A stretch of 64,000 bases of DNA from Macrostomum lignano (lineage: Eukaryota): assembly GCA_002269645.1 (NCBI GenBank), contig NIVC01000353.1, forward strand, positions 434,001 through 498,000. The letters run 5' to 3'. The notes beneath the pieces were generated by a model. It was given only the letters and a program-made list of their open reading frames with translations. It made no database searches and was not told where the DNA came from. Positions 18,001 to 43,510 of the stretch are shown here, one piece after another. Each line of letters begins with the position of its first letter. Position 1 is the first letter of the stretch. The translations under genes and the position numbers were made by a program.

Positions 18001-21000
18001 CTACTGCGGCACAACCAAATCGCTAGTGTAGTGCGTCTTCGGGATTGGCGTCGATTTGTCCTTTTTAGCCGACGTCGGCCTTTCCGAGTGACAATCGCAC
18101 GGCGCGAAGCGGAATACTTTCAGGCAGTGCAGCCCGTTGGCAGCGAACTCCGTGACGGCCAGGTGACCCTCGGGAGTGAACCGGGCGCACTGAACGTTGC
18201 CTAGATCGTCGACAGGACCCAGAGCCTGAGTGTGCAGATTTAGTTTGTGATGAATCGAATGACATGTATTATAGCATAAATCCAACCAACTCTAAATGGT
18301 CGATTTGTTGCTTCAATAAGATGTAAATTACAGTAAAGTACTATGCGCTAAGGTGGGTTTCAGGTGCTAATTTAGATCACTGTGTCTGAGGGTTTGCAAA
18401 AAATTTCAGTAGCTCCAAGATGGGTGTCTGAGGTGCAACAGCACTCCCGTAGCTCCAAGATGGGTGTCTGGGGTGCAACAGCACTCCCGTGTAGCTTCAA
18501 GATGGGTGTCTGGGGTGCAACAGCACTCCCGTAGCTTCAAGATGGGTGTCTGGGGTGCAACAGCACTCCCGTGTAGCTTCAAGATAAGCATCTGGGGTGC
18601 AACAGCACTCCCGTAGCTCCAAGATGGGTGTCTGGGGTGCAACAGCACTCCCGTAGCTCCAAGATGGGTGTCTGGGGTGCAACAGCACTCCCGTAGCTTC
18701 AAGATGGGTGTCTGGGGTGCAACAGCACTCCCGTAGCTTCAAGATGGGTATCTGGGGTGCAACAGCACTCCCGTGTAGCTTCAAGATGGGTATCTGGGGT
18801 GCAACAGCACTCCCGTAGCTTCAAGATGGGTATCTGGGGTGCAACAGCACTCCCGTGTAGCTTCAAGATGGGCATCTGGGGTGCAACAGCACTCCCGTGT
18901 AGCTTCAAGATGGGTGTCTGGGGTGCAACAGCACTCCCGTAGCTTCAAGATGGGTGTCTGGGGTGCAACAGCACTCCCGTGTAGCTTCAAGATGGGCATC
19001 TGGGGTGCAACAGCACTCCCGTAGCTTCAAGATGGGTGTCTGGGGTGCAACAGCACTCCCGTAGCTCCAAGATGGGTGTCTGGGGTGCAACAGCACTCCC
19101 GTAGCTTCAAGATGGGTGTCTGGGGTGCAACAGCACTCCCGTAGCTTCAAGATGGGTATCTGGGGTGCAACAGCACTCCCGTGTAGCTTCAAGATGGGTA
19201 TCTGGGGTGCAACAGCACTCCCGTAGCTTCAAGATGGGTATCTGGGGTGCAACAGCACTCCCGTGTAGCTTCAAGATGGGCATCTGGGGTGCAACAGCAC
19301 TCCCGTAGCTTCAAGATGGGTATCTGGGGTGCAACAGCACTCCCGTGTAGCTTCAAGATGGGTGTCTGGGGTGCAACAGCACTCCCGTAGCTTCAAGATG
19401 GGTATCTGGGGTGCAACAGCACTCCCGTGTAGCTTCAAGATGGGTGTCTGGGGTGCAACAGCACTCCCGTAGCTTCAAGATGGGTGTCTGGGGTGCAACA
19501 GCACTCCCGTGTAGCTTCAAGATAAGCATCTGGGGTGCAACAGCACTCCCGTAGCTCCAAGATGGGTGTCTGGGGTGCAACAGCACTCCCGTAGCTCCAA
19601 GATGGGTGTCTGGGGTGCAACAGCACTCCCGTGTAGCTTCAAGATGGGCATCTGGGGTGCAACAGCACTCCCGTAGCTTCAAGATGGGTGTCTGGGGTGC
19701 AACAGCACTCCCGTGTAGCTTCAAGATGGGCATCTGGGGTGCAACAGCACTCCCGTAGCTTCAAGATGGGTGTCTGGGGTGCAACAGCACTCCCGTAGCT
19801 TCAAGATGGGTGTCTGGGGTGCAACAGCACTCCCGTAGCTTCAAGATGGGTATCTGGGGTGCAACAGCACTCCCGTGTAGCTTCAAGATGGGTGTCTGGG
19901 GTGCAACAGCACTCCCGTAGCTTCAAGATGGGTATCTGGGGTGCAACAGCACTCCCGTGTAGCTTCAAGATGGGTGTCTGGGGTGCAACAGCACTCCCGT
20001 AGCTTCAAGATGGGTGTCTGGGGTGCAACAGCACTCCCGTGTAGCTTCAAGATGGGTGTCTGGGGTGCAACAGCACTCCCGTGTAGCTTCAAGATGGGCA
20101 TCTGGGGTGCAACAGCACTCCCGTAGCTTCAAGATGGGTGTCTGGGGTGCAACAGCACTCCCGTAGCTTCAAGATGGGTGTCTGGGGTGCAACAGCACTC
20201 CCGTAGCTTCAAGATGGGTATCTGGGGTGCAACAGCACTCCCGTGTAGCTTCAAGATGGGTGTCTGGGGTGCAACAGCACTCCCGTAGCTTCAAGATGGG
20301 TGTCTGGGGTGCAACAGCACTCCCGTGTAGCTTCAAGATGGGTGTCTGGGGTGCAACAGCACTCCCGTGTAGCTTCAAGATGGGCATCTGGGGTGCAACA
20401 GCACTCCCGTAGCTTCAAGATGGGTGTCTGGGGTGCAACAGCACTCCCGTAGCTTCAAGATGGGTGTCTGGGGTGCAACAGCACTCCCGTAGCTTCAAGA
20501 TGGGTATCTGGGGTGCAACAGCACTCCCGTGTAGCTTCAAGATGGGTGTCTGGGGTGCAACAGCACTCCCGTAGCTTCAAGATGGGTATCTGGGGTGCAA
20601 CAGCACTCCCGTAGCTTCAAGATGGGCATCTGGGGTGCAACAGCACTCCCGTAGCTTCAAGATGGGTGTCTGGGGTGCAACAGCACTCCCGTGTAGCTTC
20701 AAGATGGGCATCTGGGGTGCAACAGCACTCCCGTAGCTTCAAGATGGGTGTCTGGGGTGCAACAGCACTCCCGTAGCTCCAAGATGGGTGTCTGGGGTGC
20801 AACAGCACTCCCGTAGCTTCAAGATGGGTGTCTGGGGTGCAACAGCACTCCCGTAGCTCCAAGATGGGTGTCTGGGGTGCAACAGCACTCCCGTAGCTCC
20901 AAGATGGATAGTGAGGCCGATGTCAAAGACTTCAGAGCTGCTGCGAGCTCCAAGATGTGAGTCAGGGAGTGCAAAAGCAATGCTAAGATAATTATTCAAA

Positions 21001-24000
21001 GGAAAAAGAAAGCCGCCATCCACTTGACTTCCCGGACGAGCTCACCTGTTGGTGAAATTTGCCAGTCAGAGCGTACACATTCACCGTATGATTGGTGGCA
21101 TCGGCAATCAGCAGCAGGTCGGCCGACAAATCGACGCTGGTCGGCAGCACGGCGAGCCCGGGTCTCGACGCCGCAGGCTCGAACGTCAGCTTGCAGACGC
21201 CGTCGTAGTCAAATAGGCGAGCAACTCCGCAGGCCGTGTCGCAGAGGGCAATCAGCTGGCGATTGGCGGCCACGCTGTACATCTGCACCGGGCTGGCGAT
21301 GGCGGCGGCGGCAGCGGCGGATTTGGCTCCGGTTGGCGTGTCGATTGGAAAAGATTTGTCAAATTTGCAGCCTTTGCGGTACATTTCAATCTGAGAGTGG
21401 AAAGATTTGTTTGCTGGTCCGTTAGCTATTTGTAGTGTTGATAATGTAGCGGCGAATATCAGTTGCGACTCGTTAAGAATTATTGGGATTTTTCATGAAG
21501 GATTGCGACTTATGCTGGAGAGGAGTGCAGCCTGCTAGACAGGAGCCTAATCTGTTAGACAGGAGTGTTGCTTGTGTCAGACTGATTGACAACATGTTAG
21601 ACAGGAGTGTTGCTTGTGTCACCTGATAGACAACATGTTAGACAGGAGTGTTGCTTGTGTCACCTGATAGACAACATGTTAGACAGGAGTGTTGCTTGTG
21701 TCACCTGATAGACAACATGTTAGACAGGAGTGTTGCTTGTGTCACCTGATAGACAACATGCTAGACAGGAGTGTTGCTTGTGTCACCTGATAGACAACAT
21801 GTTAGACAGGAGTGTTGCTTGTGTCACCTGATAGACAACATGTTAGACAGGAGTTTTGCTTGTGTCACCTGATAGACAACATGTTAGACAGGAGTGTTGC
21901 TTGTGTCACCTGATAGACAACATGTTAGACAGGAGTGTTGCTTGTGTCACCTGATAGACAACATGTTAGACAGGAGTTTTGCTTGTGTCACCTGATAGAC
22001 AACATGCTAGAGAGGAGTGTTGCTTGTGTCACCTGATAGACAACATGTAAGACAGGAGTGTTGCTTGTGTCAGACTGATAGACAACATGTAAGACAGGAG
22101 TGTTGCTTGTGTCAGACTGATAGACAACATGTTAGACAGGAGTGTTGTTTGTGTCACCTGATAGACAACATGTTAGACAGGAGTGTTGTTTGTGTCACCT
22201 GATAGACAACATGTTAGAGAGGAGTGTTGCTTGTGTCACCTGATAGACAACATGTTAGACAGGAGTTTTGCTTGTGTCACCTGATAGACATGTTAGAGAG
22301 GAGTGTTGCTTGTGTCAGACTGATAGACAACATGTTAGACAGGAGTGTTGCTTGTGTCAGACTGATAGACAACATGTTAGAGAGGAGTGTTGCTTGTGTC
22401 AGACTGATAGACAAAATGTTAGAGAGGAGTGTTGCTTGTGTCAGACTGATAGACAATATGTTAGACAGGAGTGTTGCTTGTGTCACCTGATAGACAACAT
22501 GTTAGACAGGAGTGTTGCTTGTGTCAGACTGATAGACAACATGTTAGAGAGGAGTGTTGCTTGTGTCAGACTGATAGACAAAATGTTAGAGAGGAGTGTT
22601 GCTTGTGTCACCTGATAGACAAACATGTTAGACGGAGTTTTGCTTGTGTCAGACTGATAGACAACATGTAAGACAGGAGTGTTGCTTGTGTCACCTGATA
22701 GAAACATGTTAGACAGGAGTGTTGCTTGTGTCACCTGATAGACAACATGTTAGACAGGAGTGTTGCTTGTGTCACCTGATAGACAACATGTTAGAGAGGA
22801 GTGTTGCTTGTGTCAGACTGATAGACAACATGTTAGACAGGAGTTTTGCCTGTGTCACCTGATAGAAATGTTAGAGAGAAGTGTTGCTTGTGTCACCTGA
22901 TAGAGAGCATGTTAGAGAGGAGTGTTGCTTGTGTCAGACTGATAGACAAAATGTTAGAGAGGAGTGTTGCTTGTGTCAGACTGATAGACAATATGTTAGA
23001 CAGGAGTGTTGCTTGTGTCAGACTGATAGACAACATGTTAGACAGGAGTGTTGCTTGTGTCAGACTGATAGACAACATGTTAGAGAGGAGTGTTGCTTGT
23101 GTCAGACTGATAGACAAAATGTTAGACAGGAGTGTTGCTTGTGTCACCTGATAGACAAACATGTTAGACGGAGTTTTGCTTGTGTCAGACTGATAGACAA
23201 CATGTAAGACAGGAGTGTTGCTTGTGTCACCTGATAGAAACATGTTAGACAGGAGTGTTGCTTGTGTCACCTGATAGACAACATGTTAGACAGGAGTGTT
23301 GCTTGTGTCACCTGATAGACAACATGTTAGAGAGGAGTGTTGCTTGTGTCAGACTGATAGACAACATGTTAGACAGGAGTTTTTCCTGTGTCACCTGATA
23401 GAAATGTTAGAGAGAAGTGTTGCTTGTGTCACCTGATAGAGAGCATGTTAGATAGGAGTGTTGCTTGTGTCACCTGATATAGAGCATGCTAGACAGGAGT
23501 GTTGCTTGTGTCACCTGATAGAGAGCATGTTAGACAGGAGTTTTGCTTGTGTAACCTGATAGACATATTAGAGAGGAGTGTTGCTTGTGTCACCTGATAG
23601 ACAACATGTTAGACAGGAGTTTTGCTTGTGTCACCTGATAGACATGTTAGAGAGGAGTGTTGCTTGTGTCACCTGATAGAGAGCATGTTAGACAGGAGTG
23701 TTGCTTGTGTCACCTGATATAGAGCATGTTAGACAGAAGTCTGTTAGAGAGAAGTGTCACCTATTAAACAGGGATTCTTCCCATTCCCCAAAATTTTGTG
23801 CTTTGAGTCTACTCAATTAATTACGAGTAAGCAGGTTTCTTACAAAACTGCATTAAAAATATATTTGCAAGAAGGCTGTCGGGCACCCGAACGTCATTCT
23901 GCCCTTTCGCTGACTGCTGAGCACAGGAGAGCGGTATGTACATCTCTGTGCCTAGGAGGTTGGCCCTAAAGGGTGTACGTGATTCGGAACTGCATGCAAT

Positions 24001-25802
24001 GAACAGCATTTCACCTGTCTGGCTTCGCTAACAACGATGATGTTGTGCCCAGCATCGCAGGCGATGGCCACTGGAGCGGCTCTAGTTAAAAACATCATTC
24101 TCAAACTGCCTTTTGGCCGGAAAATCTGTACCCGATTATTTCCGGTATCGGCTACAGCGTAATTTCCGGTCGGCATCCAAGCGACATCCAATGGGCTGTC
24201 CAGTTCGCCCGGTGCAGAACCTTTGCCGCGGCCGATAATGTTCTTGAACACGCCGGCAGAGTTGAACAGCTGCACCCGATGATTCTCGGTGTCCGCGATG
24301 GCGAGTTCACCGTCCGAGGCGACGCTTAAACCGCGAGGATAGCAAAAGTAGCCTTCGCTTGAGCCACGCTGACCGACCGAGTGCAGCAGCTTGTCTTTGC
24401 TGAGTAGTCGGTGGGATAAATTAATTAATAAGGAAGCTTGAGCTCTCTTGTGTCTTTAGTATACCCAATTCCTGTTTCAGTAACCCCCCCCCCAATGCTT
24501 CAGTTACACCCGATGCTATTCTTCAGTAACCCTCCCGATGCTTCAGTAACCCTCCTGATGTCTCAGTACCCTCCCGATGCTTCAGTAACCTTCGATGCTT
24601 CAGTAACCATCCCTATGCTTACAGTAATCCCCGATGCTTCAGTAACCCTCCTGATGTCTCAGTACCCTCCCGATGCTTCAGTAACCTTCGATGCTTCAGT
24701 AACCATCCCTATGCTTACAGTAATCCCCGATGCTTCAGTAACCCTCCTGATGTCTCAGTACCCTCCCGATGCTTCAGTAACCTTCGATGCTTCAGTAACC
24801 ATCCCTATGCTTACAGTAATCCCCGATGCTTCAGTAACCCTCCCGATGCTTCAGTAATCCCCAATGCTTAAGTAACCCTCCCGATGCTTCAGTAACCTTC
24901 GATGCTTCAGTAACCTTCGATGCTTCAGTAACCTTCGATGCTTCAGTAACCCTCCCGATGCTTCAGTAATCCCCGATGCTTCAGTAACCTTCCATGCTTT
25001 AGAAACCCCCCGATGCTTCAGTAACCGCCCCCCCCGATAGTTCATTAACCTTCCCAATGCATCAGTAGCCTCCACGATACTTCAGTATCAACCCCAATAG
25101 CTACTTTAAGTAACCCTTGATTCAAAACTTCATTCTACAGGAGACGAGACACCTCTCAACAATCTTTGTTATGCATCTCTAATTTCGGACGTCACTCACG
25201 GCTTATCCTCGAACCGGAACTGTTGCACTTTGTAATGCAAGGCCTGCACATCCTGCTGGGTCTGCTTGAGACCGAATGCCAGCAGAAACGCCGGCCAATG
25301 CTGAGAGTCATGCTTGTCCTGCTGAGATGATGGACGACACGAGTGAGCTGAAATTTTGTTAGTAGAAATATGAGTAATCAAGTTGAACTTTAGTTGTATC
25401 ATAAACAAAGCTTTATTAAAAAATGGAAGCAATCATCGTACGACGATTTTGACGCCAAAGAACAAAACGTTCATTTGACGGCGATATAATGACGGTCACC
25501 TAAATACCATACCGTTTCCCTGAAGACCATACCGGTCACCTGAAGCCCCTTATATCTAGCTCGTAAGACGTCAAAAGATCAGCCTGCTCTCCTTATAAAT
25601 CCTCAGTTGTCGCATCTGTTTTTGATGCGGAAAAGTGCCAAGCAGCAAAATCCATTGCGAGCTTACCCGACGGATGCACCGACTTAAACACGCGATGTGA
25701 GCACTCCGTGTTGAGCAGATGATTCGACGGGTAGCTCTGACGGATCTCAACGGCGCACGGGCCGAGACGTTTCAAACGAAGCTGAGATTGCGAATCCACC
25801 AT
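18001..25802 (-). CDS. NHL-repeat (six-bladed beta-propeller) protein, ~410 aa; exons 25667-25802, 25200-25347, 24015-24399, 21046-21390, 18001-18225
   Basis: All junctions are GT-AG and phase-compatible. NHL repeats: FCYPRGLSVASDGELAIADTENHRVQLF, LDSPLDVAWMPTGNYAVADTGNNRVQIF, LPTSVDLSADLLLIADATNHTVNVY. The start codon assignment is tentative. Confidence 0.85.
18410..20908. repeat. 40/42-bp minisatellite (GTAGCTTCAAGATGGGTGTCTGGGGTGCAACAGCACTCCC[GT]), ~2.5 kb, in NHL-gene intron
   Basis: Directly visible. No unique spacers. Confidence 0.98.
21550..23745. repeat. 41-bp minisatellite (TGTTAGACAGGAGTGTTGCTTGTGTCACCTGATAGACAACA), ~2.2 kb, in NHL-gene intron
   Basis: Directly visible. An internal higher-order duplication (~0.5 kb) is apparent from repeated variant patterns. 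Confidence 0.98.
24465..25075. repeat. ~17-20-bp repeat (CCCGATGCTTCAGTAACCCT) with three 96-bp higher-order units, in NHL-gene intron
   Basis: Directly visible. Confidence 0.95.
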
Positions 25803-26140
25803 TGCGAACCTGAAAGGGGGTGTTCAAACTGGCCTCTCTATCTGCTGCTGTGAAGCTAAAGAGAAATTTTCGAAGCAGCGGTCTCTCCTATTAAAGCTTT
25901 AATGAAGAAAGGCTGCAGGGTACAGTACAGCCATTGTTAGCCCTGTTACCAAGCGCCAAATTCCAATAAGAAGCTTAAATTTTCTTTCTTTCTCTGCCTG
26001 CAAAACTGTGCAAGGCTGTTGGCCTTAAAAGCTGCATTGAGGGGTCGCATCTCCATCCACCCTGCTCGCTCGGTTTTTACGCGTGTGCATAAGAATTGTA
26101 CGGCAATAAGGTTGCCGCACTGCCTGTCTATCAGTTTATA

Positions 26141-27023
<883 letters not shown>

Positions 27024-27326
27024 GTATCTATCCATCTCAGATACACTCGCATTAAATGTAGAACAACTGCAATTAGTGCATCACTCGCTAGTGCAGCATA
27101 ACACTTTTTCTGTCAGCATTTTATTTATGATTGTACTCATTAAAAAGCAAAATGGCGATTAAGTGTACATTAGATTAGGTCACTCGTTCATGAAATAAAA
27201 AGTACTTCATCAAAGAAAACATTGTCATTAGTAAGTGAAACTCCCTTATTACCTACGCACACTATGATAGGCAAAAATGTTTAGTGAATCTATGATGGAT
27301 TCCGTTTGCTTTCGACTTACTTTCCG

Positions 27327-27529
27327 TCAGCCCTGAGCAGCAGCGTCTTTTCGCTTCTTGTTAGCTTCCATCATTCTATTCACGAGTTCTTGAGCGGGGA
27401 CCTGCTTTTGCATCTTCGTCTTCGTAGCCGCCCGTTCTGCTTGAGACATGGCGGGCCGGTTTACGGGCCAGCTGATGTCCATTTTCTTCTTTGGTGGCGC
27501 CGACTTAAACGGATTTTTGACGCTCTTCA
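27327..27529 (-). CDS. Cationic secreted-peptide family, copy G1: intact exon 2 without its own exon 1 (duplicate of G2 exon 2)
   Basis: Acceptor ctttctcctttcccag|tg (phase 1). Encodes (V)KSVKNPFKSAPPKKKMDISWPVNRP..EANKKRKDAAAQG*. AATAAA on the minus strand near 27120. Confidence 0.7.
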
Positions 27530-27554
27530 CTGGGAAAGGAGAAAGGCGGCTCCG

Positions 27555-28345
27555 CTGTGTCTATTTGCCCTATTCCACTGTGTCTATCTGCCATATTCCA
27601 CTGTGTCTATCTGCCATATTCCACTGTGTCTATCTGCCATATTCCACTGTGTCTATCTGCCATATTCCACTGTGTCTATCTGCCCTATTTCACTGTGTCT
27701 ATCTGCCATATTCCGCTGTGTCTATTTGCCCTATTCCACTGTGTCTATCTGCCATATTCCACTGTGTCTATCTGCCCTATTCCACTGTGTCTATCTGCCC
27801 TATTCCACTGTGTCTATCTGCCATATTCCACTGTGTCTATCTGCCCTATTTCACTGTGTCTATCTGCCATATTCCGCTGTGTCTATTTGCCCTATTCCAC
27901 TGTGTCTATCTGCCATATTCCACTGTGTCTATCTGCCCTATTCCACTGTGTCTATCTGCCCTATTCCACTGTGTCTATCTGCTCTATTCCACTGTGTCTA
28001 TCTGCCCTATTTCACTGTGTCTATCTGCCCTATTCCACTGTGTCTATCTGCCTTATTCCACTGTGTCTATCTGCCATACGCCGCTGTGTCTATCTGCCCT
28101 ATTCCGCTGTGTCTATCTGCCCCATTCCGCTGTGTCTATCTGCCCTATTCCACTGTGTCTATCTGCTATATGCCGCTGTGTCTATCTGCCCTATTCCACT
28201 GTGTCTATCTGCCCTATTCCACTGTGTCTATCTGCCCTATTCCAGTGTGTCTATCTGCCCTATTCCAGTGTGTCTATCTGCCCTATTTCACTGTGTCTAT
28301 CTGCCTTATTATTCTGCTGTATCTATCTGCCCTATTTTCTGCCCT
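27555..28345. repeat. 23-bp minisatellite (TATTCCACTGTGTCTATCTGCCC), array 1
   Basis: Directly visible. Source of the CHIPLCLSALFH ORFs. Confidence 0.97.
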
Positions 28346-28349
28346 ATTC

Positions 28350-29340
28350 AAGGCTAGCAGCAGCCTGATGAGCATCCTTAAAAAGCAGGGACACTCGGTC
28401 CGCTTGATCCGAGACGCTAAAAAGTCAGCTCTCATACAACTTGGACTTTACATAGATTTTCAGTGGGCTTTCGGCTTTCAAGACTGCAGAAACCGAGACT
28501 GTGCTGTATGCCGACGACACGGCTGCTTTGGCCAAGTTTGTCCCGGTTCCACAGCAACTAAAATGGCCTACAGAATTTGCCAGAAGGTCCGCTGTGACTC
28601 CAGGTGCGCGGTCTACGCAATTCTTTGCAACACCTGCAATGGCCGTTGCATTTATGTCGGCGAAACAGGTGGAGCTATCAAGGTCAGACTCCAGGCCCAC
28701 CTAAGTGACATTAGGCTCGCTAAGGACACCCCTGTTAGCAGACATTTTTGCTCTCCGAATCACTGCCTCGACTATCTTCGCTTCATGGGGCTCTGGTATC
28801 TCAGCACCGAGAGCGAGACCAGCAAAGAAGGAGCGCTACGCAGACGCAGGGTCATGGAACAGAAACTCATCTCCCTGCTGAGCACGCAGTCACCTGCAGG
28901 CCTCAATACAATTAACAGCAACACAAGCGCTTGTATCCCAATAGTTATTCCTTTTACGGATAGATCGACTAATATTGTACACGAAATTCGCACTGTTCTC
29001 TCAAACCATGCACATGGGTTGGACACTGTTGCTGCGTACACTCGAGCACCCTCTCTAAAGGACATTCTTTGCCCCTCAAAACTGCCTGCCCTCACTGATG
29101 GTATTGATTAAACTTTCAGAGTGAGCACTATTGAGCAACGTGCGACGGAGACGCTATTTGATTTTATAAACTAACTCACAATTCATTTTATTTCCCACTT
29201 ACAATATAAACTTCGTTCCATTTTATAGCACAATTATACTATTGTAAAACCCTGACGAAGGCCATTTCACGGCCGAAATATCGGTTTACCATAATTCTTA
29301 TATTTTTTGACCTTTGTGACTATCTTATTTATTTCTCAGT
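28350..29340 (+). mobile_element. 5'-truncated Penelope-like element (subfamily A): end of RT thumb, Cys-rich linker, GIY-YIG endonuclease, 3' UTR with hammerhead
   Basis: C-terminal part of ORF 27306-29111: FQDCRNRDCAVC, AVYAILCNTCNGRCIYVGETGG..RLQAH, EQKLISLLSTQSPAGLN. Homologous but clearly diverged from 32780-33535. Confidence 0.9.
29247..29287 (+). ncRNA. Minimal type I hammerhead ribozyme (PLE-associated)
   Basis: AAACC-CTGACGA-a-GGCC(atttcac)GGCC-GAAA-TATC-GGTTT: stem I, CUGAnGA core, stem II, GAAA, very short stem III and UC cleavage site. Confidence 0.85.
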
Positions 29341-29364
29341 TACCTTGGATAGAGCTGCCACTGC

Positions 29365-31304
29365 GTGAGAGGTTTTTTCAAACGTCTATCTACTCCCTGG
29401 ACCAGTCAGCTCTCTCTTTGGCTATCTGAGAATGCCGAGAAGCAGCCGCGCACATGGCACAATTCTGAAAGAAAACCTGCTGAGCGAAATTACCGACAAC
29501 ATCAAAACACCCGCACTGGAGGGCATCAACACCGCTCACGGCCAGACCACAGGCCTCCAGACGCTACGCAGGACAGGACGGGCGGCGACCGGCAACAACG
29601 TCGGAATGCATGTGGGTCGCTGACAACCGCCGCGTCCGGAGTCGCCCGCCAAGTCAAACAGCTGTTTCGTGCTGCTCACCACCTGGAAAATTGGCAGGTG
29701 ACACCATCTTCGATCCGACTAAAGTCTCAGCAGCTGAAAACACTAATCAGGCCTGCAGTGCCCACGGAATCGACAAAATCGCGGATTGCTGAGAACGCCG
29801 ATCAGTGGGAAGTCAGCACGCTAGACACAATGCAGAGCCATTATGAGATCAGCATCCATCATCTAGCTGCTGAACTTCTGGAAGCCAGGAAGGACGCTGA
29901 CCCTTCTGATTGGGAAACCGGCTGGCAAGTCGGTTTTCACTGGGCGGCGAAGGACCTCGGCAGAAGATTCAGCTACAGCCCTGATCTGCTGCAATACCGG
30001 TTGAAAAAATGTCCATCGAGCTGAAGGTACCTGAATTTACTGCTAACAAAGGTAGGACTATCTCTTCTTTTGATACTGTGATTGTAAGTAACCAAACCAC
30101 CAGCTCTATGGGGGTTCCCGTTTCAAACCTCTTGTCTGGGGTGGTGGGTTCGAATCAACCCCACCAAGCCGCCAGCCCTGTGACAACTGAGCAGGGGAGG
30201 GAGCAACCAGCAGGGAATCGTCCCTCCAGCCCTTCAACGGGCATGGAAGAATCTCCCGACTGGCGAGGCTTTAACGAGGAACCGAGCATGCTAAGCCATA
30301 CGGACGAGGACAACCAAGCTTGCCCGCCGATTTTTCCGACAGAAGAGCCGCCTGAAGGACTCAATACGCAAATGCAGGGTCCAGTTGCCTGTGACCAGGG
30401 GCTGGACACGGGGGTGGTCTGTGACCAGACACCTCCACCTGCAAACTCCATTGCTGCTGATCAAAACGAATCAGCTATTTCGATACCTGCCATCTTGACT
30501 TCGAGTCGTCAACAGCAGAGTCAAGTCGCCTGTGACCAGGGGCTTGACACGGGAGTGGTCTGTGACCAGACATCCCCAGCTGCTGCTAATAGCAACAACA
30601 CCGATGCCAGCCAGGCTGACTCTTCCGTGTCTTTTGCGACACCCACCGACAACGATGCAGTTCTACAGAGTAGATTTGCTTGCGCTGAGCCACCCAGGCT
30701 TGCCAGTGACAACAATAGGGACAGTCTTGAGCTGACCCCTCCTCGATCGGCACTTGCTCAACCAGGCCAGATTAACGTCCATAAGGGATTTAAGAAAGAC
30801 TGGAAACTGACCCCTATCGAAAAGTCAACGATCGCGATCGGCGATGAGAGTCTCTCTGAGCCCGGGCAAGCGCACCCAGATGTACAATTTGAAATTTTTC
30901 CGAATCTACGCGCTGAGAACCTAATCAAGGTGCTGCGTGAGCAGTTGAAAAACCCTAGCTCAGCTGTCAAAGCGGTCATTCTCTTCCCTTGTGGTCATGA
31001 CCTGTTGAGACAATTTGAAGGTGTCCTCGACAAACAGCTCACGACAATTGTGAATCATTGTCGCAAGGCCTTTCCAGAGGCAAACATCTACACACTTGAC
31101 TCAGTGGTGGATGCCGAGGCAACGGACAGCGTCCGAAGCAACGTGGAAAAATTGAACCGCCATGCCCAGAATCTCAACCAGAAGGGGCACATGTCACTAC
31201 CCAGACAGGGTTTGACCTTCCTGTCAGACAAGGTCACACTATCTGACCAATCGGCCTTGGAGGTCTTCAGGATTGTCTACGGCAAAGTGCAAAAAAACTT
31301 GTAG
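29365..31304 (+). CDS. PLE ORF1: helical N-terminal domain, low-complexity linker and C-terminal SGNH/GDSL-esterase-like domain; frameshift at the A-run ~30004-30009
   Basis: ORFs 29365-30024 and 30009-31304 fuse (RLK-MSIEL) if one A is removed. KKDWKLTPIEKSTIAIGDESL..FEIFPNL..VILFPCGHD..AFPEANIY resembles SGNH-like ORF1 domains of retroelements. Confidence 0.6.
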
Positions 31305-31333
31305 GTTTTAGGAATGCGGCTAGCAACCAAGTC

Positions 31334-33535
31334 TTGAACTTATCGAATTATCGTCTTTCTGACTGCGAAACCGAAATTTTAGGAATGGGGAAGAACTTTG
31401 TGCCAGCCCCAATTGTTATGGGGTCCAGCGTCCTTTCTGACTCCATCAAGGTTTTCAAGCGGAGAATAGTTCTTAACTCCCTGCTTCAGCGTCGCACGTG
31501 TGCTTTCACCCCGCGCATCCCTTATACTGGCCGAGCTTCGATCCCCAACATCAACTTGGACAAGTGGCGCTCTCACAGAGACCTTTTTGAAAGCCTTGAC
31601 AGGATTAGAATTCCAAGAATCATACACAACAAGCCAAACCTTCAGGAGCAGCAGAGAATGGCACTGAAGACTCTTCGAGACAATAGCAGTATCGTCATTA
31701 AACCTGCCGACAAGGGCAGCAATATGGTCGTTTTGAATCGAACTGATTACATACTGGAAGCTAACAGGCAGCTCTCCAACAGGACCTTCTACCAACCCCT
31801 TGACACTGCAATGAGCGCCCAGACCAGTGCCATTATCAAAGCCATTTTTCAAGATCTTAAAGAAGAAAAGATAATTACTAATCATCAATACTCGCAACTG
31901 ATTCCGCCAACTATTCCAAGAGATCGATTTTTTTACCTTTTGCCAAAAATCCATAAGGATCCGAAGAATGGCCTACTCCTGGAGTGCCTCCTGGGAGACC
32001 CATTGTCTCGGACTGCAGCTCGGAAAGCTACATGAGCGCCAAATTTATCGATCTCTTCCTACAGCCGATCGCTAAGGAACAAGACTCCTTCATCCGAGAC
32101 ACGGACCACTTTCAAGCGGCTATCAATGATTTGATTTTTGAAAAAGACGAAAATGTCTTTCTGGTTACAATGGATGTTGAATCCCTGTACACCAATATTC
32201 CCACTGATAAGGGGATGGACGCCATTAGAGATGCCTTTCAAACATTTCCCCAAACCTCAAGGCCAGATAACCATCTTCTTGCGCTCCTGGACATTAACTT
32301 GAACAAAAATGATTTTGTTTTCAACGACGCGCTACCTTCAAGTCAAAGGCACAAGCATGGGAAAGGCCTTTGCGCCATCCTACGCCAACATATTTATGTC
32401 TGCCTGGGAATCCAAAGCTTTAGAAACTGCTCCGTTTACCCCTCGTTTCTTCAAGCGCTACATTGACGACATTTTTATGGTCTTCGTCGGCACTGAAGAC
32501 GAACTAAAGGAGATGCACAAGCATCTGAATGAGTTCGATTGCAACATCCGACTCACGATGCAATACAGCAGAGAGAAGGTTCACTTCCTGGACTGCTGTG
32601 TCAGTCTGACTGACGAAGGCAACAACAAGAGACTTTCGTGCTCAATCTACTTCAAACCCACCGATTCACGTCAGCTTTTAAATCCGGGGTCTTTTCACCC
32701 AAAGCACACTTTTAAAGGTATACTGAAATCTCAGTTCCTCCGTTACGCTCGCCGTTGCACATTTAAAGAAGACTTCGATGAGGCCAGCAGCAGCTTAACA
32801 AGCATCCTGAAGAAACAAGGTTATTCTGTGCGCTTAATCAGGGATTCTAAAAAATCTGCCCTCATCCAGCTGGGCCTCTACATTGATGGTCGGTGGGAGT
32901 TCGGCTTCCAGGATTGTGGCAATCTAAGCTGCCGTCCTTGCAGAGAGCACGGGAATTTTGGCCAAGTTTGTTTAGGGTCCAGCGCTACAAAAATGATTTA
33001 CAAAATTTGTCAAAAAGTCCGCTGTGACTCCAGGAATGTGGTGTATGCCATTCTGTGCAAGACTTGCAATGACCGCTGTATCTACGTAGGTGAGACTGGA
33101 GGCGCTCTTAAAGTCAGACTTCAGGCTCACCTGAGCGACATTAGACTGGCTAAAGACACCCCAATCTCCAGGCACTTTCGGTCACCAAACCACAGTATTC
33201 AGGACCTCCGCTTTATGGGTCTGTGGTACCTCAGTACTGAGTGCCTGACCACTAAAGAGGGCGCTCAACGCAGGCGGAGGAATATGGAACAGAAGCTCAT
33301 CGCTTTACTACAGACCCAGACTCCAGCAGGCTTAAACACCGTCATCACTGAAAAAGACGCCTGCATCCCAATAGTGATCCCTTTCACGGACCACTCTGGG
33401 CGAATTGTTCATCAAATTCGCACGGCCATTTCGAACCACGCTGCAGAGCTGGATACGGTGGCTGCCTATACTCGCTCACGCTCATTAAAGGACATTCTAT
33501 GTCCACCCAATCTGCCTGCCGTAACTAATGGTTAG
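31334..33535 (+). CDS. PLE ORF2: TERT-like reverse transcriptase plus GIY-YIG endonuclease; two single-base frameshifts (~31968, ~32330)
   Basis: Motifs: IKPADKGS, FYLLPKIHK, PGRPIVSDC, TMDVESLYTNIP, QVKGTSMGKAFAPSYANIFM, RYIDDIF, HFLD, SFHPKHTFKGILKSQFLRY, VVYAILCKTC..IYVGET. Confidence 0.93.
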
Positions 33536-33713
33536 GCCCGAAACTCAAACCTCTTTTCAGATGAGCACTAGATGTACAGATGTACACACGCGTTGCAACG
33601 TGCCCGCCCAACCATATTGATTATTTTATTTTATTCGCGTCTTTCTATACTCACTATAAATATTTAACTCTGTTTTAATTTGCCCTTTTTTCACAGTTTT
33701 TTATTTACAATTT

Positions 33714-33750
33714 ACCCTGACGAAGACCCTGTTTAGGTCGAAAATTCGGT
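33714..33750 (+). ncRNA. Minimal type I hammerhead ribozyme (PLE-associated)
   Basis: ACC-CTGACGA-a-GACC(ctgttta)GGTC-GAAA-ATTC-GGT. Confidence 0.85.
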
Positions 33751-34112
33751 TCTTTTCTTAGAATTAAAGAAATTGTGAATTTGCTTCAACTGTGTGCGTG
33801 GTTTCATTTCGCATTATCTATCTCAGATACACTCGCATTAAATGTAGAACAACTGCAATTAGTGCATCACTCGCTAGTGCAGCATAACACTTTTTCTGTC
33901 AGCATTTTATTTATGATTGTACTCATTAAAAAGCAAAATGGCGATTAAGTGTACATTAGATTAGGTCACTCGTTCATGAAATAAAAAGTACTTCATCAAA
34001 GAAAACATTGTCATTAGTAAGTGAAACTCCCTTATTACCTACGCACACTATGATAGGCAAAAATGTTTAGTGAATCTATGATGGATTCCGTTTGCTTTCG
34101 ACTTACTTTCCG

Positions 34113-35662
34113 TCAGCCCTGAGCAGCAGCGTCTTTTCGCTTCTTCTTAGCTTCCATCATTCTATTCACGAGTTCTTAAGCGGGGACCTGCTTTTGCATC
34201 TTCGTCTTCGTAGCCGCCCGTTCTGCTTGAGACATGGCGGGCCGGTTCACGGGCCAGCTGATGTCCATTTTCTTCTTTGGTGGCGCCGACTTAAACGGAT
34301 TTTTGACGCTCTTCACTGGGAAAGGAGAAAGGCGGCTCCGCTGTGTCTATTTGCCCTATTCCACTGTGTCTATCTGCCCTATTTCACTGTGTCTATCTGC
34401 CATATTCCGCTGTGTCTATTTGCCCTATTCCACTGTGTCTATCTGCCCTATTCCACTGTGTCTATCTGCCCTATTCCACTGTGTCTATCTGCTCTATTCC
34501 ACTGTGTCTATCTGCCCTATTCCACTGTGTCTATCTGCTCTATTCCACTGTGTCTATCTGCCCTATTCCACTGTGTCTATCTGCTCTATTCCACTGTGTC
34601 TATCTGCTCTATTCCACTGTGTCTATCTGCCCTATTTCACTGTGTCTATCTGCCATATTCCGCTGTGTCTATCTGCCCTATTCCACTGTGTCTATCTGCC
34701 CTATTTCACTGTGTCTATCTGCCCTATTCCACTGTGTCTATCTGCTCTATTCCACTGTCTATCTGCTCTATTCCACTGTGTCTATCTGCCCTATTTCACT
34801 GTGTCTATCTGCCATATTCCGCTGTGTCTATCTGCCCTATTCCACTGTGTCTATCTGCCCTATTTCACTGTGTCTATCTGCTCTATTCCACTGTCTATCT
34901 GCCATATTCCGCTGTGTCTATTTGCCCTATTCCACTGTGTCTATCTGCCCTATTCCACTGTGTCTATCTGCTCTATTCCACTGTCTATCTGCCATATTCC
35001 GCTGTGTCTATTTGCCATATTCCACTGTGTCTATCTGCCCTATTCCACTGTGTCTATCTGCCATATTCCACTGTGTCTATTTGCCCTATTTCACTGTGTC
35101 TATTTGCCCTATTCCACTGTGTCTATCTGCCCTATTCCACTGTGTCTATCTGCCCTATTTCACTGTGTCTATCTGCCTTATTATTCTGTGTCTATCTGCC
35201 ATATTCCGCTGTGTCTATTTGCCCTATTCCACTGTGTCTATCTGCCGTATTCCACTGTGTCTATCTGCCATATTCCACTGTGTCTATCTGCCCTATTTCA
35301 CTGTGTCTATCTGCCCTATTTCACTGTGTCTATCTGCCTTAATCTTCTGTGTCTATCTGCCATATTCCGCTGTGTCTATTTGCCCTATTCCACTGTGTCT
35401 ATCTGCCCTATTTCACTGTGTCTATCTGCCTTATTATTCTGCTGTGTCTATCTGCCTTATTATTCTGCTGTATCTATCTGCCCTATTTTACAGTATGTAT
35501 CTGCTCTAATCCTTAATCTTATTTCGAGCCCTATCAGCTAAAACACAAATAAGCATATTTACCTTTTGCCATAATAGGCCTGGGGCATCCTTGAACTTCA
35601 GTAGCTAACATCAGAGCCATTACCAGCACGCACAGAGCTGTGAGAAGTTGGCAGCTAGACAT
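34113..35662 (-). CDS. Cationic secreted-peptide family, copy G2 (exon 1 35563-35662, exon 2 34113-34315) with premature TAA at 34176-34178
   Basis: Exon 1 MSSCQLLTALCVLVMALMLATEVQG-CPRPIMAK, donor AAAG|GTAAAT (phase 1), acceptor tttcccag|tg. CAA in G1 is TAA here. Confidence 0.75.
34340..35500. repeat. 23-bp minisatellite, array 2 (G2 intron)
   Basis: Same unit as 27555-28345. Confidence 0.97.
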
Positions 35663-37249: not shown

Positions 37250-37700
37250 GGATCAGATTGTTCCACTGTTTCTATTCCACTGGGTCTATCTGCCCTATTC
37301 CACTGTGTCTATCTGCCCTATTCCACTGTGTCTATCTGCCCTATTCCACTGTGTCTATCTGCCCTATTCCACTGTGTCTATCTGCCCTATTCCACTGGGT
37401 CTATCTGCCCTATTCCACTGTGTCTATCTGCCCTATTCCACTGTGTCTATCTGCCCTATTCCACTGTGTCTATCTGCCCTATTCCACTGTGTCTATCTGC
37501 CCTATTCCATTGTGTCTATCTGCTCTATTCCACTGTGTCTATCTGCCCTATTCCACTGTGTCTATCTGCCCTATTTCACTGTGTCTATCTGCCCTATTCC
37601 ACTGTGTCTATCTGCTCTATTCCACTGTGTCTATCTGCCCTATTCCACTGTGTTTATCTGCCCTATTTTGCTGTCTATCTGCCCTATTCCACTGTGTCTT
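37250..37700. repeat. 23-bp minisatellite, array 3 (not inside a recognisable peptide gene)
   Basis: Same unit. Confidence 0.96.
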
Positions 37701-38049
37701 TCAGGTTGACATTTTCGCGTAAAATTTTTTACTAAAATTACATTCTAACTCGCGTACTAATAGTTTGTAGAAGCGAATTTTTTTCTACACCATAAAGTCG
37801 TGTTTTTACGAGTTTAACCACAGACATTTGATAATTAAGTAGTACCAGAGAATATTGAGTATACATAGAATGCCAACGAAGCTTTTAAAAAGTGAAGCCG
37901 ATTTTCGCGTTCCGCCGGAAGTTTGGTTTTGGACCATAGACTAAAAATATATTTAAAAGCGTTATTTATTCTCATAGACCAAAGAGCGGCAGCACTTGTA
38001 GGAGTATATTTATTACAAGTATATTTTTAGCTCAAAACAATTTAGTCGC

Positions 38050-41050: not shown

Positions 41051-41975
41051 TTATCGGCGGCCGGCCTGCTTTCTTTTAAAATAAGCCGCTTCCCGCTGGC
41101 TTTTCATATTCTTCAAATCCTTATTGATGGAATCTATTGGGGCCTTTTTTGACGTGGTAGGCCGGTTCACGGGCCAGCTGATGTCCAACTTCTTTTTTTG
41201 TGGCGGTGGCGCCGATTTAAAAGGATTTTTGACGCTCTTCACTGTGGAAGGAGAGTGCGGCGGCTCCGCTGTGTCTACCTGCCCGATTCCGCTGTGTCTA
41301 TCTGCCCCATTCCACTGTGTCTATCTGCCCCATTCCACTGTGTCTACCTGCCCTATTCCACTGTGTCTATCTGCCCCATTCCACTGTGTCTATCTACCCA
41401 TTCCGCTGTGTCTACCTGCCCTATTCCGCTGTGTCTACCTACCCTATTCCGCTGTATCTATCTACCCATTCCGCTGTGTCTACCTGCCCTATTCCGCTGT
41501 ATCTATCTACCTATTCCGCTGTGTCTACCTGCCCTATTCCGCTGTATCTATCTACCCATTCCGCTGTGTCTACCTGCCCTATTCCGCTGTATCTATCTAC
41601 CCTATTCCGCTGTATCTATCTACCCTATTCCGCTGTATCTATCTACCCTATTTTGCTGTGTCTATCTACCCTACTCTGCTGTGTCTACCTGCCTTATTCC
41701 GCTGTGTCTATCTACCCTACTCCGCTGTCTACCTGCCCTATTCCACTGCGTCTATCTACCCTACTCCGCTGTCTACCTGTCCTATTCCGCTGTGTCCATT
41801 TACCCTATCCCACTGTGTCTGTTCCTAAATCGTATTTCGAGCCCTATCAGCTAAAACACAAATAAGCATATTTACCTTTTGCCATAATAGGCCTGGGGCA
41901 TCCTTGAACTTCAGTAGCTAGCATCAGAGCCATTACCAGCACGCACAGAGTTGTGAGAAGTTGGCAGCTAGACAT
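41051..41975 (-). CDS. Cationic secreted-peptide family, copy G3, intact, 96 aa (exon 1 41876-41975, exon 2 41051-41241)
   Basis: MSSCQLLTTLCVLVMALMLATEVQG-CPRPIMAK|VKSVKNPFKSAPPPQKKKLDISWPVNRP..REAAYFKRKQAGRR*. Canonical phase-1 GT-AG intron with acceptor ctctccttccacag. Confidence 0.82.
41270..41820. repeat. 23-bp minisatellite, array 4 (G3 intron; diverged variant units)
   Basis: Same family, TATTCCGCTGTGTCTACCTGCCC-type variants. Confidence 0.95.
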
Positions 41976-42899: not shown

Positions 42900-43510
42900 C
42901 ATTCCGCTGTGTCTATCTGCCCTATTCCACTGTGTCTATCTGCCCTATTCCACTGTGTCTATCTGCCCTATTCCACTGTGTCTATCTGCCCTATTCCGCT
43001 GTGTCTATCTGCCCTATTCCACTGCGTCTATCTGCCCTATTCCACTGTGTCTATCTGCCCTATTCCGCTGTGTCTATCTGCCCTATTCCACTATGTCTAT
43101 CTGCCCTATTCCACTGTGTCTATCTGCCCTATTCCGCTGTGTCTATCTGCCCTATTCCACTGCGTCTATCTGCCCTATTCCACTGTGTCTATCTGCCCTA
43201 TTCCGCTGTGTCTATCTGCCCTATTCCACTGTGTCTATCTGCCCTATTCCGCTGTGTCTATCTGCCCTATTCCACTGTGTCTATCTGCCCTATTCCGCTG
43301 TGTCTATCTGCCCTATTCCGCTGTGTCTATCTGCCCTATTCCGCTGTGTCTATCTGCCCTATTCCGCTGTGTCTATCTGCCCTATTCCGCTGTGTCTATC
43401 TGCCCTATTCCGCTGTGTCTATCTGCCCTATTCCGCTGTGTCTATCTGCCCTATTCCGCTGTGTCTATCTGCCCCATTCCACTTTGTCTATCGACTGTAT
43501 CTGCCCTGTT
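42900..43510. repeat. 23-bp minisatellite, array 5
   Basis: Same unit, highly homogeneous. Confidence 0.96.

What the first reader, a model, noticed from the sequence alone, without database searches (positions are those of the whole stretch)
27028..35662. PLE insertion flanked by a ~1.3-kb duplication: proximal exon 2 has a stop codon, distal duplicate is intact
Seen: 27028-28338 is repeated at 33814-35489 (offset 6786; only the array length differs), bracketing the PLE like a giant target-site duplication. The first ~330 bp look identical by eye. Exon 2 differs at three sites: AAC/AAG, a synonymous Val change, and CAA in G1 vs TAA in G2 (34176-8). The only exon 1 (35563-35662) can therefore splice to a truncating exon 1.2 kb away, or across the antisense 5.5-kb PLE to an intact exon about 8 kb away. 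Inference: retroelement-driven exon duplication creating alternative terminal exons, with the full-length peptide depending on splicing over the element.
Basis: partly seen in the sequence, partly recalled or inferred. Interest (0 to 1): 0.72.

Follow-up and report, generated by a model that had tools for sequence, protein, structure and literature searches.

The report
Retroelement insertion that duplicated a flatworm exon

Summary
Window 27029-28338 and 33815-35489 are direct copies of a 510-bp unique part (3' UTR plus exon 2) and a 23-bp minisatellite, and they abut both ends of a 5,475-bp Penelope-like element (PLE) on the opposite strand.

The window is Macrostomum lignano Mlig_3_7, contig NIVC01000353.1. 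A collinear contig of the same assembly (L002) carries this locus with one copy and no PLE, so it serves as the empty site.

The two copies differ by 0.6%. Each differs from L002 by about 2%. The proximal copy carries the derived changes TAA and AAG.

The insert is a composite of two PLE lineages: a 1-kb 3' fragment followed by a full-length element. Each part carries a hammerhead-like motif.

My best reading (about 0.6) is a single target-primed insertion. The first nick fell at the edge of the (TATC)n microsatellite and the second break 1.3 kb away at the end of the minisatellite, giving a kilobase-scale target-site duplication.

The "alternative terminal exon" idea is not shown. The proximal copy keeps its own poly(A) signal. 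The only GenBank model (PAA84952.1) splices proximal exon 2 into distal exon 2 out of frame, not exon 1 to the distal exon.

An assembly artefact and a two-step origin remain possible.

The parts
26137..27037 (.). (TATC)n microsatellite, about 225 units. Its last units form the left edge of the duplicated block, and this edge is the inferred first-nick site.
   Evidence: Tandem Repeats Finder; sequence. The sister contig L002 has (AGAT)78 at the same place.
27029..27326 (-). Distal copy: 3' UTR and downstream flank of the host gene, including the AATAAA signal (reverse complement of 27120-27125).
   Evidence: identical to 33815-34112 except at 27033.
27327..27529 (-). Distal copy of exon 2. 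It keeps the ancestral CAA (Gln) and AAC (Asn) and carries a derived GTA. Its frame is open to the TGA at 27327-27329. Joined to exon 1 it would give a 100-aa precursor.
   Evidence: P0004 from the sister contigs has the same Q and N.
27530..28338 (.). Distal copy of the intron's 23-bp minisatellite (34 units), including the acceptor region.
   Evidence: same first and last units as the proximal array.
28339..28350 (+). 5' junction: a 10-nt extra partial array unit (CTGCCCTATT) followed by 2 nt before PLE homology begins. Read as a microhomology or filler junction.
28339..29350 (+). Upstream PLE fragment (PLEa). It covers the last ~251 codons of an RT-EN ORF (open, with a GIY-YIG domain) plus the 3' UTR, and takes the position of the upstream pseudo-LTR. 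It is only 70% nt / 77% aa identical to the matching part of the main element. The 3' limit is approximate.
29249..29286 (+). Hammerhead-ribozyme-like motif in the PLEa 3' UTR (CUGACGA, bulged A, GGCC...GGCC, GAAA, UAUC, then GGUU).
   Evidence: The features match the PLE min-HHRs described in PMC4209133. Rfam does not report it.
29351..33813 (+). Main PLE (PLEb). It has an upstream ORF1-like frame (29985-31301) and an RT/GIY-YIG ORF (31247-33535) broken by two compensating frameshifts near 31968 and 32330. Its 3' UTR ends at the duplication boundary. The 5' limit is approximate.
33714..33751 (+). Hammerhead-like motif in the PLEb 3' UTR. It has the same core, and helix II carries a compensatory change (GACC...GGUC).
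33815..34112 (-). Proximal copy: 3' UTR and flank with the AATAAA signal (reverse complement of 33906-33911). It retains the ancestral ...GAGATAGATA microsatellite edge.
34113..34315 (-). Proximal copy of exon 2, with the derived TAA stop (34176-34178) and derived AAG (Lys). Joined to exon 1 it gives a 79-aa product.
34316..35562 (-). Intron of the host gene, almost entirely 23-bp minisatellite (about 51 units, 34337-35512).
35563..35662 (-). Exon 1: start codon, a hydrophobic signal-peptide-like N-terminus and a GT donor.
27437..34187 (-). The 6,751-bp intron implied by the GenBank CDS PAA84952.1. The donor is CAG|GT inside proximal exon 2 and the acceptor is AG|AAC inside distal exon 2. Both ends carry the 6-nt sequence AAGCAG.

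Best explanation
A single retrotransposition event inserted a composite Penelope-like element (a 1-kb 3' fragment of one PLE lineage joined head-to-tail to a full-length element of another) just downstream of a two-exon secreted-peptide gene of Macrostomum lignano.

Inferred mechanism, by target-primed reverse transcription:
1. The bottom strand was nicked at the edge of the (TATC)n microsatellite (27028/27029), and its 3'-OH primed cDNA synthesis from the 3' end of the PLE RNA.
2. The top strand was broken 1.3 kb away, at the far end of the intronic 23-bp minisatellite (28338/28339), rather than a few bases away.
3. The cDNA's 3' end was joined there through a short microhomology (CTGCCCTATT).
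4. Filling in the two 1.3-kb single-stranded stretches produced a kilobase-scale target-site duplication that contains exon 2, the 3' UTR with its poly(A) signal, and the minisatellite.

Because the duplicated block is a complete terminal exon, the gene (exon 1 - intron - proximal exon 2 - poly(A) signal) stayed intact, and the distal copy became an orphan exon behind the element. The proximal copy later acquired a premature stop and an Asn-to-Lys change. The distal copy acquired two silent or non-coding changes. The minisatellites were reshuffled, and the PLE ORF picked up frameshifts.

Shown: the anatomy, the empty site, the polarity of the changes, and the heterologous nature of the two PLE parts. 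Inferred: that it was one event, the order of nicks, and the fate of transcripts.
For: 1. The duplication abuts both ends of the insert to the base and is in direct orientation.
2. A collinear sister contig of the same assembly (L002, NIVC01001978.1) has exon 1 - 36.7-unit array - exon 2 - UTR - (AGAT)78 once, with no PLE. Its sequences at both breakpoints match the outer flanks in the window.
3. The copies differ by 3/492 (0.61%) and each differs from L002 by 1.8-2.0%. They are therefore sister copies, younger than the split between the contigs. The two arrays share unit variants that L002 lacks.
4. The element's 3' end, 62 nt beyond a PLE-type hammerhead-like motif, meets the microsatellite edge. 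PLEs have a reported insertion bias for microsatellites (PMC8557442).
5. The 5' junction carries a 10-nt microhomology or filler. Microhomology-mediated 5' junctions are described for PLEs and LINEs (PMC3846280).
6. The two PLE parts differ mainly at third codon positions (47/34/142 by position; pS 0.80, dN 0.16) and the PLEa frame is open for 251 aligned codons. They diverged as functional elements, not in place, so the insert is not an old element whose flanks were homogenised.
7. The 2-3 frameshifts fit the number of indels expected from neutral decay since the duplication.
8. Kilobase-scale target-site duplications are a documented outcome of target-primed reverse transcription: L1 in NER-deficient cells, up to 6.7 kb (PMC5223499), and the Dualen LINE, median 900 bp (PMC9977147).
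Against: - Reported PLE target-site duplications are short: 8-10 bp or absent (PMC3846280). I found no report of a kilobase-scale one for a PLE.
- No other copy of this PLE family was available, so its true termini, and therefore the claim that the duplication begins exactly at the element's ends, rest on this one copy.
- The contig comes from a Canu assembly of PacBio CLR reads, polished with Pilon, of a repeat-rich and partly duplicated genome (PMC5730564). The region contains five arrays of the same 23-bp unit, and no reads could be inspected.
- The two arrays differ by 17 units and in their internal order. That is a lot of change for 0.6% divergence.
- A one-event origin cannot be formally separated from a tandem duplication with a later insertion at its junction.
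Confidence: 0.6

Rival explanations
1. Two steps. First a 1.3-kb tandem duplication of [exon 2 + UTR + minisatellite], for example by replication slippage or unequal exchange between repeat-rich flanks. Later a PLE inserted into the novel junction, which carries a (TATC)2 remnant that could attract an element preferring microsatellites.
For: The junction of such a duplication would read ...CCCTATTTT|TATCTATCTCAG, which contains two TATC units. PLEs favour microsatellites. Both breakpoints lie at the edges of tandem repeats, which are prone to replication errors.
Against: The element would have to land exactly on a single junction point while a 900-bp (TATC)n target lies 1.3 kb away. No short target-site duplication is recognisable around the insert; at most 2-3 nt are shared. 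No intermediate state was seen, since the sister contig has neither the duplication nor the PLE.
Confidence: 0.12
2. Assembly artefact. Either two haplotypes or homeologues of the locus were concatenated, or a chimeric join was made through the repeated arrays, so that the real chromosome has one copy of the block. The TAA and the other differences would then be allelic variants or polishing errors.
For: The assembly is redundant (764 Mb against a genome of about 500 Mb, with 180-312 Mb duplicated) and was built from PacBio CLR reads with Pilon polishing. A probable homopolymer error or variant exists nearby: an A7 run at 45311-45317 in paralogue 3, compared with P0003. The 0.6% divergence is within the range of allelic variation.
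Against: Both novel junctions (array end to PLE 5' end, and PLE 3' end to block start) lie in specific, non-repetitive contexts. Array 1 ends in the same degenerate terminal units as array 2 immediately before the PLE. Both junctions cannot exist in single-copy haplotypes unless the same composite PLE inserted twice, 1.3 kb apart and in the same orientation. The window contains no N gap and no other bracketing duplication.
Confidence: 0.13
3. The duplication is functionally exploited. Transcripts read through the proximal poly(A) site and are spliced across the antisense PLE, so the distal exon supplies an alternative C-terminus. This could be the full-length 100-aa form (exon 1 to 27529) or the frameshifted 94-aa form annotated in GenBank.
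For: GenBank protein PAA84952.1 is reproduced exactly only by joining exon 1, 34188-34315 and 27380-27436 across the PLE with GT..AG boundaries. The annotation was built from RNA-seq (STAR, StringTie, TACO) and BLAT-mapped Trinity transcripts. On the sister contig a 14-kb intron joins a paralogue's exon 1 to this gene's exon 2, so long-range joins are annotated elsewhere in this cluster.
Against: - The annotated junction uses weak internal sites instead of the strong natural acceptor at 27529, repeats 35 nt and shifts the frame.
- Its two ends share a 6-nt AAGCAG. This is also what one would see if a transcript from an allele with a 35-bp slippage duplication were forced onto a genome holding two exon copies.
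- The pipeline also merges neighbouring transcripts across repetitive spans of up to 10 kb.
- Neither the 100-aa nor the 79-aa product is in the protein collection.
- The proximal copy has an intact AATAAA.
Confidence: 0.15

Closest known systems
Canonical endonuclease-positive Penelope-like elements (Penelope/Poseidon, Neptune, Nematis clades)
   Same: Reverse transcriptase followed by a C-terminal GIY-YIG endonuclease with CCHH cysteines and an upstream CX4CxxC motif. A 5'-truncated copy sits upstream in a head-to-tail partial tandem (pseudo-LTR position). A hammerhead-like motif lies in both terminal regions. The insertion is at a microsatellite edge and the 5' junction shows microhomology.
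   Different: The upstream 'pseudo-LTR' is from a different PLE lineage (70% nt identity, synonymous sites saturated), not a copy of the same element. The flanking duplication is 1.3 kb instead of 0-10 bp. There is an unrelated 439-codon upstream frame with no detectable homologues. Rfam's hammerhead models do not score the motif.
Extra-long target-site duplications of LINEs: human L1 in NER-deficient cells (PMC5223499) and Dualen-4b_cRei in Chlamydomonas (PMC9977147)
   Same: The duplicated host sequence directly flanks both sides of a retroelement inserted by target-primed reverse transcription. The size is in the hundreds of bp to several kb. The proposed cause is a second-strand break far from the first nick. 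The L1 paper's authors already noted that such events could duplicate exons.
   Different: Those elements use APE and/or RLE endonucleases, and the events were caught de novo in culture or in mutation-accumulation lines. Here the element is a GIY-YIG PLE, and the event is a single fixed or segregating germline case inferred from one assembly. Its breakpoints sit at the edges of two tandem-repeat arrays.
PLE-mediated capture and amplification of host genes in Adineta vaga (PMC3846280)
   Same: A PLE is associated with a new copy of intron-containing host sequence.
   Different: In the rotifer the host gene lies between pseudo-LTRs and was moved to a new locus as part of the retrotransposed unit, with an 8-bp target-site duplication. 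Here the host sequence lies outside the element, at its original locus, on both sides. That is the signature of a target-site duplication, not of transduction.
L1-associated tandem duplications at insertion sites in cancer and experimental genomes (PMC11702581)
   Same: A local tandem duplication with a retroelement insertion at the junction, attributed to processing or replication of the broken ends before ligation.
   Different: Those are somatic events in human cells, of kb to Mb scale, with a different element class.

Membership tests
Penelope-like element (canonical EN+) | Reverse transcriptase domain related to PLE/TERT-type RTs | tested here: met
   Pfam RVT_1 matches 32303-33532 at E = 8.8e-5, below the gathering score. 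The protein search found 237 homologues at E <= 1e-10, down to 1e-191; the listed hits mostly combine RVT_1 with GIY-YIG. A 710-aa homologue (P0018) aligns along 31331-33436.
Penelope-like element (canonical EN+) | GIY-YIG endonuclease C-terminal to the RT, with Zn-finger-like cysteines | tested here: met
   Pfam GIY-YIG matches at E = 1.1e-3 and 1.9e-3, below the gathering score, in both PLE parts. The motif ...CDSRxxVYAILCxTCxxRCIYVGETGG... and an upstream CX4CxxC can be read directly. Homologues carry PF01541. The domain order matches the description in PMC8557442.
Penelope-like element (canonical EN+) | Partial tandem / pseudo-LTR architecture with a 5'-truncated upstream copy | tested here: inconclusive
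   The geometry is met: 28351-29102 is collinear with 32781-33532 at a constant offset of 4430. However, the two copies are only 70% identical and diverged under purifying selection. They are therefore two lineages, not two copies from one template.
Penelope-like element (canonical EN+) | Hammerhead ribozyme motif in the terminal repeats | tested here: inconclusive
   A 38-nt island is the only alignable part of the two 3' UTRs. It has the CUGANGA...GAAA...UC core, a bulged base 5' of helix II, a compensatory pair in helix II and a palindromic 4-nt helix III, as described for PLE min-HHRs. The pattern occurs twice in the window against 0.00 expected, though it was partly derived from these two sequences. 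Rfam finds nothing at E <= 5. Helix I of the second copy is weak. Cleavage was not tested.
Penelope-like element (canonical EN+) | Short target-site duplication of variable length (0 to tens of bp) | tested here: not met
   The flanking duplication is 1,310 / 1,675 bp. This departs from normal PLE behaviour; it does not argue against the insert being a PLE.
Retroelement insertion with extra-long target-site duplication | Direct duplication of host DNA abutting both ends of the insert | tested here: met
   27029-28338 ends where the insert begins, and 33815-35489 begins where it ends.
Retroelement insertion with extra-long target-site duplication | The empty site carries the duplicated segment once, with the same outer flanks | tested here: met
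   Sister contig L002. It is a homeologous or allelic copy 2-2.6% diverged, not the same chromosome in another individual.
Retroelement insertion with extra-long target-site duplication | The insert ends at the element's true 3' terminus at the first-nick site | tested here: inconclusive
   No second copy of the family was found in the window, in L002 or in the protein collection. The only support is that the 3' UTR runs 62 nt beyond the hammerhead-like motif in PLEb, and that a comparable distance in PLEa reaches the start of PLEb.
Retroelement insertion with extra-long target-site duplication | Both copies present on one DNA molecule | not testable with these tools
   Only the assembled contig is available. 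Reads SRX1063031 could not be accessed.
Alternative terminal exons created by exon duplication | Transcripts that use each copy as a terminal exon | not testable with these tools
   No RNA-seq access. The only indirect evidence is the GenBank CDS, which joins the two copies at internal sites. The 100-aa and 79-aa products are absent from the collection.

The most novel reading that the evidence does not exclude
GIY-YIG Penelope-like elements can complete integration using a second-strand break more than a kilobase from the first nick, here at the borders of a microsatellite and a minisatellite. This suggests that the second break is supplied by the host (a stalled fork or a structure-prone repeat) rather than by the element's endonuclease. 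If so, PLE insertions would be a source of kilobase-scale tandem duplications, including whole terminal exons, in the many invertebrate genomes where PLEs are abundant.
Probability: 0.4. Interest if true: 0.6.

Novelty: new member of a known kind. Interest (0 to 1): 0.42.

Why it matters
How PLEs integrate is poorly understood. The reviews cited here call for mechanistic work on their unusual insertion products. A PLE flanked by a 1.3-kb duplication, with a matching empty site, is a natural example showing that the distance between the two strand breaks can be very large in this class, as has been shown experimentally for LINEs.

It also shows how a retroelement can land next to a gene without breaking it, while leaving a spare copy of its last exon. 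In this case the in-use proximal copy later acquired a stop codon, and the spare distal copy still holds the ancestral sequence.

For users of the M. lignano genome there is a practical point. The GenBank model BOX15_Mlig033008g1 has a frameshifted C-terminus because it bridges the two exon copies, so it should be treated with caution.

Tried and rejected
- **Old PLE with homogenised flanks.** I considered that the PLE is old and its flanks were kept similar by gene conversion. Rejected: the 30% divergence between the two PLE parts lies mostly at third codon positions, with an open frame and no indels. It arose in active lineages, not in place.
- **Stepwise arrival of the two PLE parts.** If PLEa had inserted first and PLEb later made the duplication, PLEa would lie inside the duplicated block and so appear twice. 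It does not.
- **3' transduction or gene capture by the PLE.** Rejected: the host sequence lies outside the element on both sides at the original locus, and the right-hand copy continues seamlessly into the intron.
- **Defining the element's ends from other copies.** There are none in the window or L002. No M. lignano PLE proteins are in the protein collection; the best hit is 70% identical and comes from a metagenome.
- **Rfam.** Both the gathering and the permissive searches gave no hammerhead or any other family.
- **ORF1-like frame 29985-31301.** No Pfam family and no homologue.
- **Programmed -1 frameshift at A_AAA_AAC (31291-31297).** No downstream structure (z = +1.5). A 1-nt change in the A7 run is the simpler explanation.
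- **Literature search for the gene identifiers** (Mlig033008 and related): no paper.
- **Third contig (NIVC01001911.1).** The locus fetched (L003) ends before exon 2, so it could not serve as a second empty site.
- **Clustering of differences in the exon.** All three differences within 27038-27529 fall in the 203-bp exon. The chance of that is about (203/492)^3 = 0.07, so it is not significant.
Full report
**Source of the window.** The spliced product of the gene in the finding matches Macrostomum lignano proteins. The locus fetched for the best hit is 100% identical to window 17380-45662. The window is therefore Mlig_3_7 (GCA_002269645.1), contig NIVC01000353.1, with record coordinate = window coordinate + 434,000. 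This is a Canu assembly of PacBio CLR reads, polished with Pilon, of the DV1 line. That line carries extra large chromosomes, so the assembly is redundant (PMC5730564).

**The observation.** It is correct to the base.
- 27029-27545 and 33815-34331 align without gaps and differ at four positions: 27033, 27360, 27392 and 27462.
- Three of these lie in exon 2: AAC/AAG, CAA/TAA (34176-34178) and GTA/GTG.
- Both copies run into a 23-bp minisatellite of 34 versus about 51 units. Both arrays end in the same degenerate terminal units at 28338 and 35489.
- This is the only large non-array duplication in the window.

**The host gene.** It lies on the minus strand.
- Exon 1 (35563-35662) encodes a hydrophobic, signal-peptide-like N-terminus.
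- The roughly 1.2-kb intron is almost entirely minisatellite.
- Exon 2 encodes a lysine-rich tail.
- Two paralogues with the same layout lie at about 41.2-42.0 kb and 45.3-45.7 kb and are annotated as 96-aa proteins.
- No function is known. Pfam gave nothing credible, and the gene identifiers appear in no searchable paper.

**The insert.** 28339-33813 is a Penelope-like element on the plus strand, antisense to the gene.
[quoted passage not shown] The protein search found 237 homologues at E <= 1e-10; the listed hits mostly combine RVT_1 with GIY-YIG.
- It is a composite. 28339 to about 29350 is the last ~1 kb of one PLE (open frame plus 3' UTR). It is followed head-to-tail by a full-length element. 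This is the usual pseudo-LTR geometry (PMC8557442).
- The two parts are only 70% identical in nucleotides and 77% in amino acids. Differences by codon position are 47/34/142, synonymous sites are saturated, and there are no indels. They diverged as functional elements, so the insert was heterologous when it arrived. The element cannot be an old insertion with homogenised flanks.
- The only alignable part of the two 3' UTRs is a 38-nt island (29249-29286 and 33714-33751). It has the hammerhead core, a bulged base 5' of helix II, a compensatory G:C to A:U change in helix II, and a palindromic 4-nt helix III. These are the traits described for PLE minimal hammerheads (PMC4209133). The pattern occurs only at these two places in the window. 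Rfam does not detect it, so I call it a candidate.
- The RT ORF carries two compensating frameshifts near 31968 and 32330. It is preceded by an orphan 439-codon frame that overlaps it in the -1 frame at an A7 run.
- This number of frameshifts fits neutral decay since the duplication. The estimate uses 0.3% divergence per copy over 5.5 kb and an indel-to-substitution ratio of 0.15-0.3 measured against the sister contig.

**The empty site.** The cluster mate of the annotated protein (P0004, 100 aa) lies on two other contigs.
- One of them, L002 (NIVC01001978.1), is collinear with the window over more than 30 kb at 92-99% identity.
- There the locus reads exon 1 - 36.7-unit array - exon 2 - UTR - (AGAT)78 once, with no PLE.
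- Its sequences at the two breakpoints match the window's outer flanks.
- L002 and the paralogues give the ancestral states: GTG, CAA, AAC, and T at 27033. The proximal copy therefore gained TAA and AAG, and the distal copy gained GTA and the 27033 change.
- The copies differ by 0.61%. Each differs from L002 by 1.8-2.0%, and the flanks by 2.6%.
- The two arrays share unit variants absent from L002 but are internally reshuffled.

**Mechanism.** The simplest account is one target-primed insertion.
- The first nick fell at the microsatellite edge; PLEs favour microsatellites.
- cDNA synthesis ran through the main element's RNA and on into a second, heterologous PLE RNA or a read-through template.
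- The cDNA end was joined by microhomology (CTGCCCTATT) to a top-strand break 1.3 kb away, at the far end of the minisatellite.
- Fill-in then gave a 1.3-kb target-site duplication.
- Reported PLE duplications are 0-10 bp (PMC3846280). Kilobase-scale ones are documented for LINEs: L1 in NER-deficient cells, up to 6.7 kb, with the remark that exons could be duplicated this way (PMC5223499); and Dualen, median 900 bp (PMC9977147).
- Both breakpoints sit at the edges of tandem arrays. This hints that the distant break was supplied by the host. That point is inference only.

**Rivals.**
- A tandem duplication followed by insertion exactly at its junction needs a coincidence, but the junction would carry a (TATC)2 target.
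- An assembly artefact cannot be excluded without reads. However, both novel junctions lie in specific sequence, and both cannot exist in single-copy haplotypes.
- Stepwise arrival of the two PLE parts, and 3' transduction, are each contradicted by the layout.

**Consequences for the gene.**
- The duplicated block includes the AATAAA signal (33906-33911) and about 90 bp beyond it. The proximal copy is therefore a complete terminal exon, and the gene was not disrupted.
- The distal copy lacks an exon 1 of its own.
- The only annotated product, PAA84952.1 (94 aa), equals exon 1 + 34188-34315 + 27380-27436 exactly. That implies a 6,751-bp GT..AG intron from inside the proximal exon to inside the distal exon. 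It repeats 35 nt and shifts the frame.
- Because the annotation is RNA-seq-guided, some RNA evidence may link the copies.
- There are reasons for caution. The sites are weak. Both ends share AAGCAG, which is the footprint of a 35-bp slippage duplication in another allele forced onto a two-copy genome. The pipeline also merges transcripts across repetitive gaps.
- On the sister contig the model joins a paralogue's exon 1 to this gene's exon 2 over 14 kb. Models in this cluster are therefore loose.

**Verdict.** The structure is real in the assembly. It is best explained as a PLE insertion with an exceptionally long target-site duplication that copied a terminal exon. It is a new example, in a different retroelement class, of a known outcome of target-primed reverse transcription. 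The functional reading (alternative terminal exons) is not established.

Noticed in passing
window 29249-29286 and 33714-33751 (+): A hammerhead-ribozyme-like motif is conserved in the 3' UTRs of both PLE parts. It has a compensatory change in helix II, a bulged A and a palindromic helix III. Rfam's hammerhead models miss it even at E <= 5.
   Followed up: partly
window 29985-31304 and 31291-31297 (+): A 439-codon frame upstream of the RT ORF has no homologue in 5.8 billion proteins. It contains a 141-bp internal repeat (30369-30442 / 30510-30583). It overlaps the RT frame in the -1 frame at A_AAA_AAC, 5 nt before its stop codon. No downstream structure was found, so a 1-nt change in the A7 run is the likelier cause. 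A two-ORF PLE would be unusual.
   Followed up: partly
window 27551-28336, 34337-35512, 37272-37702, 41265-41820, about 42898-43495: The same 23-bp minisatellite fills the intron of each paralogue of the secreted-peptide family. It also forms two 'orphan' arrays (37.3 kb and 42.9 kb) with no recognisable exon beside them. These may be relics of lost gene copies.
   Followed up: no
window 45311-45317 (-): Paralogue 3 has an A7 run where the protein from the sister contigs (P0003) implies A6. This shifts the frame of its last 15 codons. It is either a real pseudogenising indel or a PacBio homopolymer error.
   Followed up: no
L002 10001-24164: On the sister contig, the GenBank model for the 100-aa protein (P0004) starts at the exon 1 of the upstream paralogue. 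It skips that paralogue's exon 2 (10897) and the gene's own intact exon 1 (about 22.93 kb). This is either a 14-kb intergenic splice or a multi-mapping artefact.
   Followed up: partly
L002 11867-17770: A 5.9-kb stretch on the sister contig has no counterpart in the window (it falls between window 40309 and 40321). It is probably another mobile-element insertion and is unrelated to the PLE at the nucleotide level.
   Followed up: no
window 26137-27037 versus L002 24467-24777: The (TATC)n microsatellite next to the insertion is 225 nearly perfect units in the window. On the sister contig it is 78 units at 91% purity.
   Followed up: no
protein P0006: A PLE RT fragment 58% identical to this element is deposited as a protein of a Kangiellaceae bacterial metagenome-assembled genome (V2I33_18800). 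It is most likely eukaryotic contamination of that bin.
   Followed up: no
window 18380-23700: There are very long tandem arrays with periods of about 40-82 bp. They lie within the span of the neighbouring annotated NHL-repeat gene (L001 19861-27662, equal to window 18001-25802).
   Followed up: no
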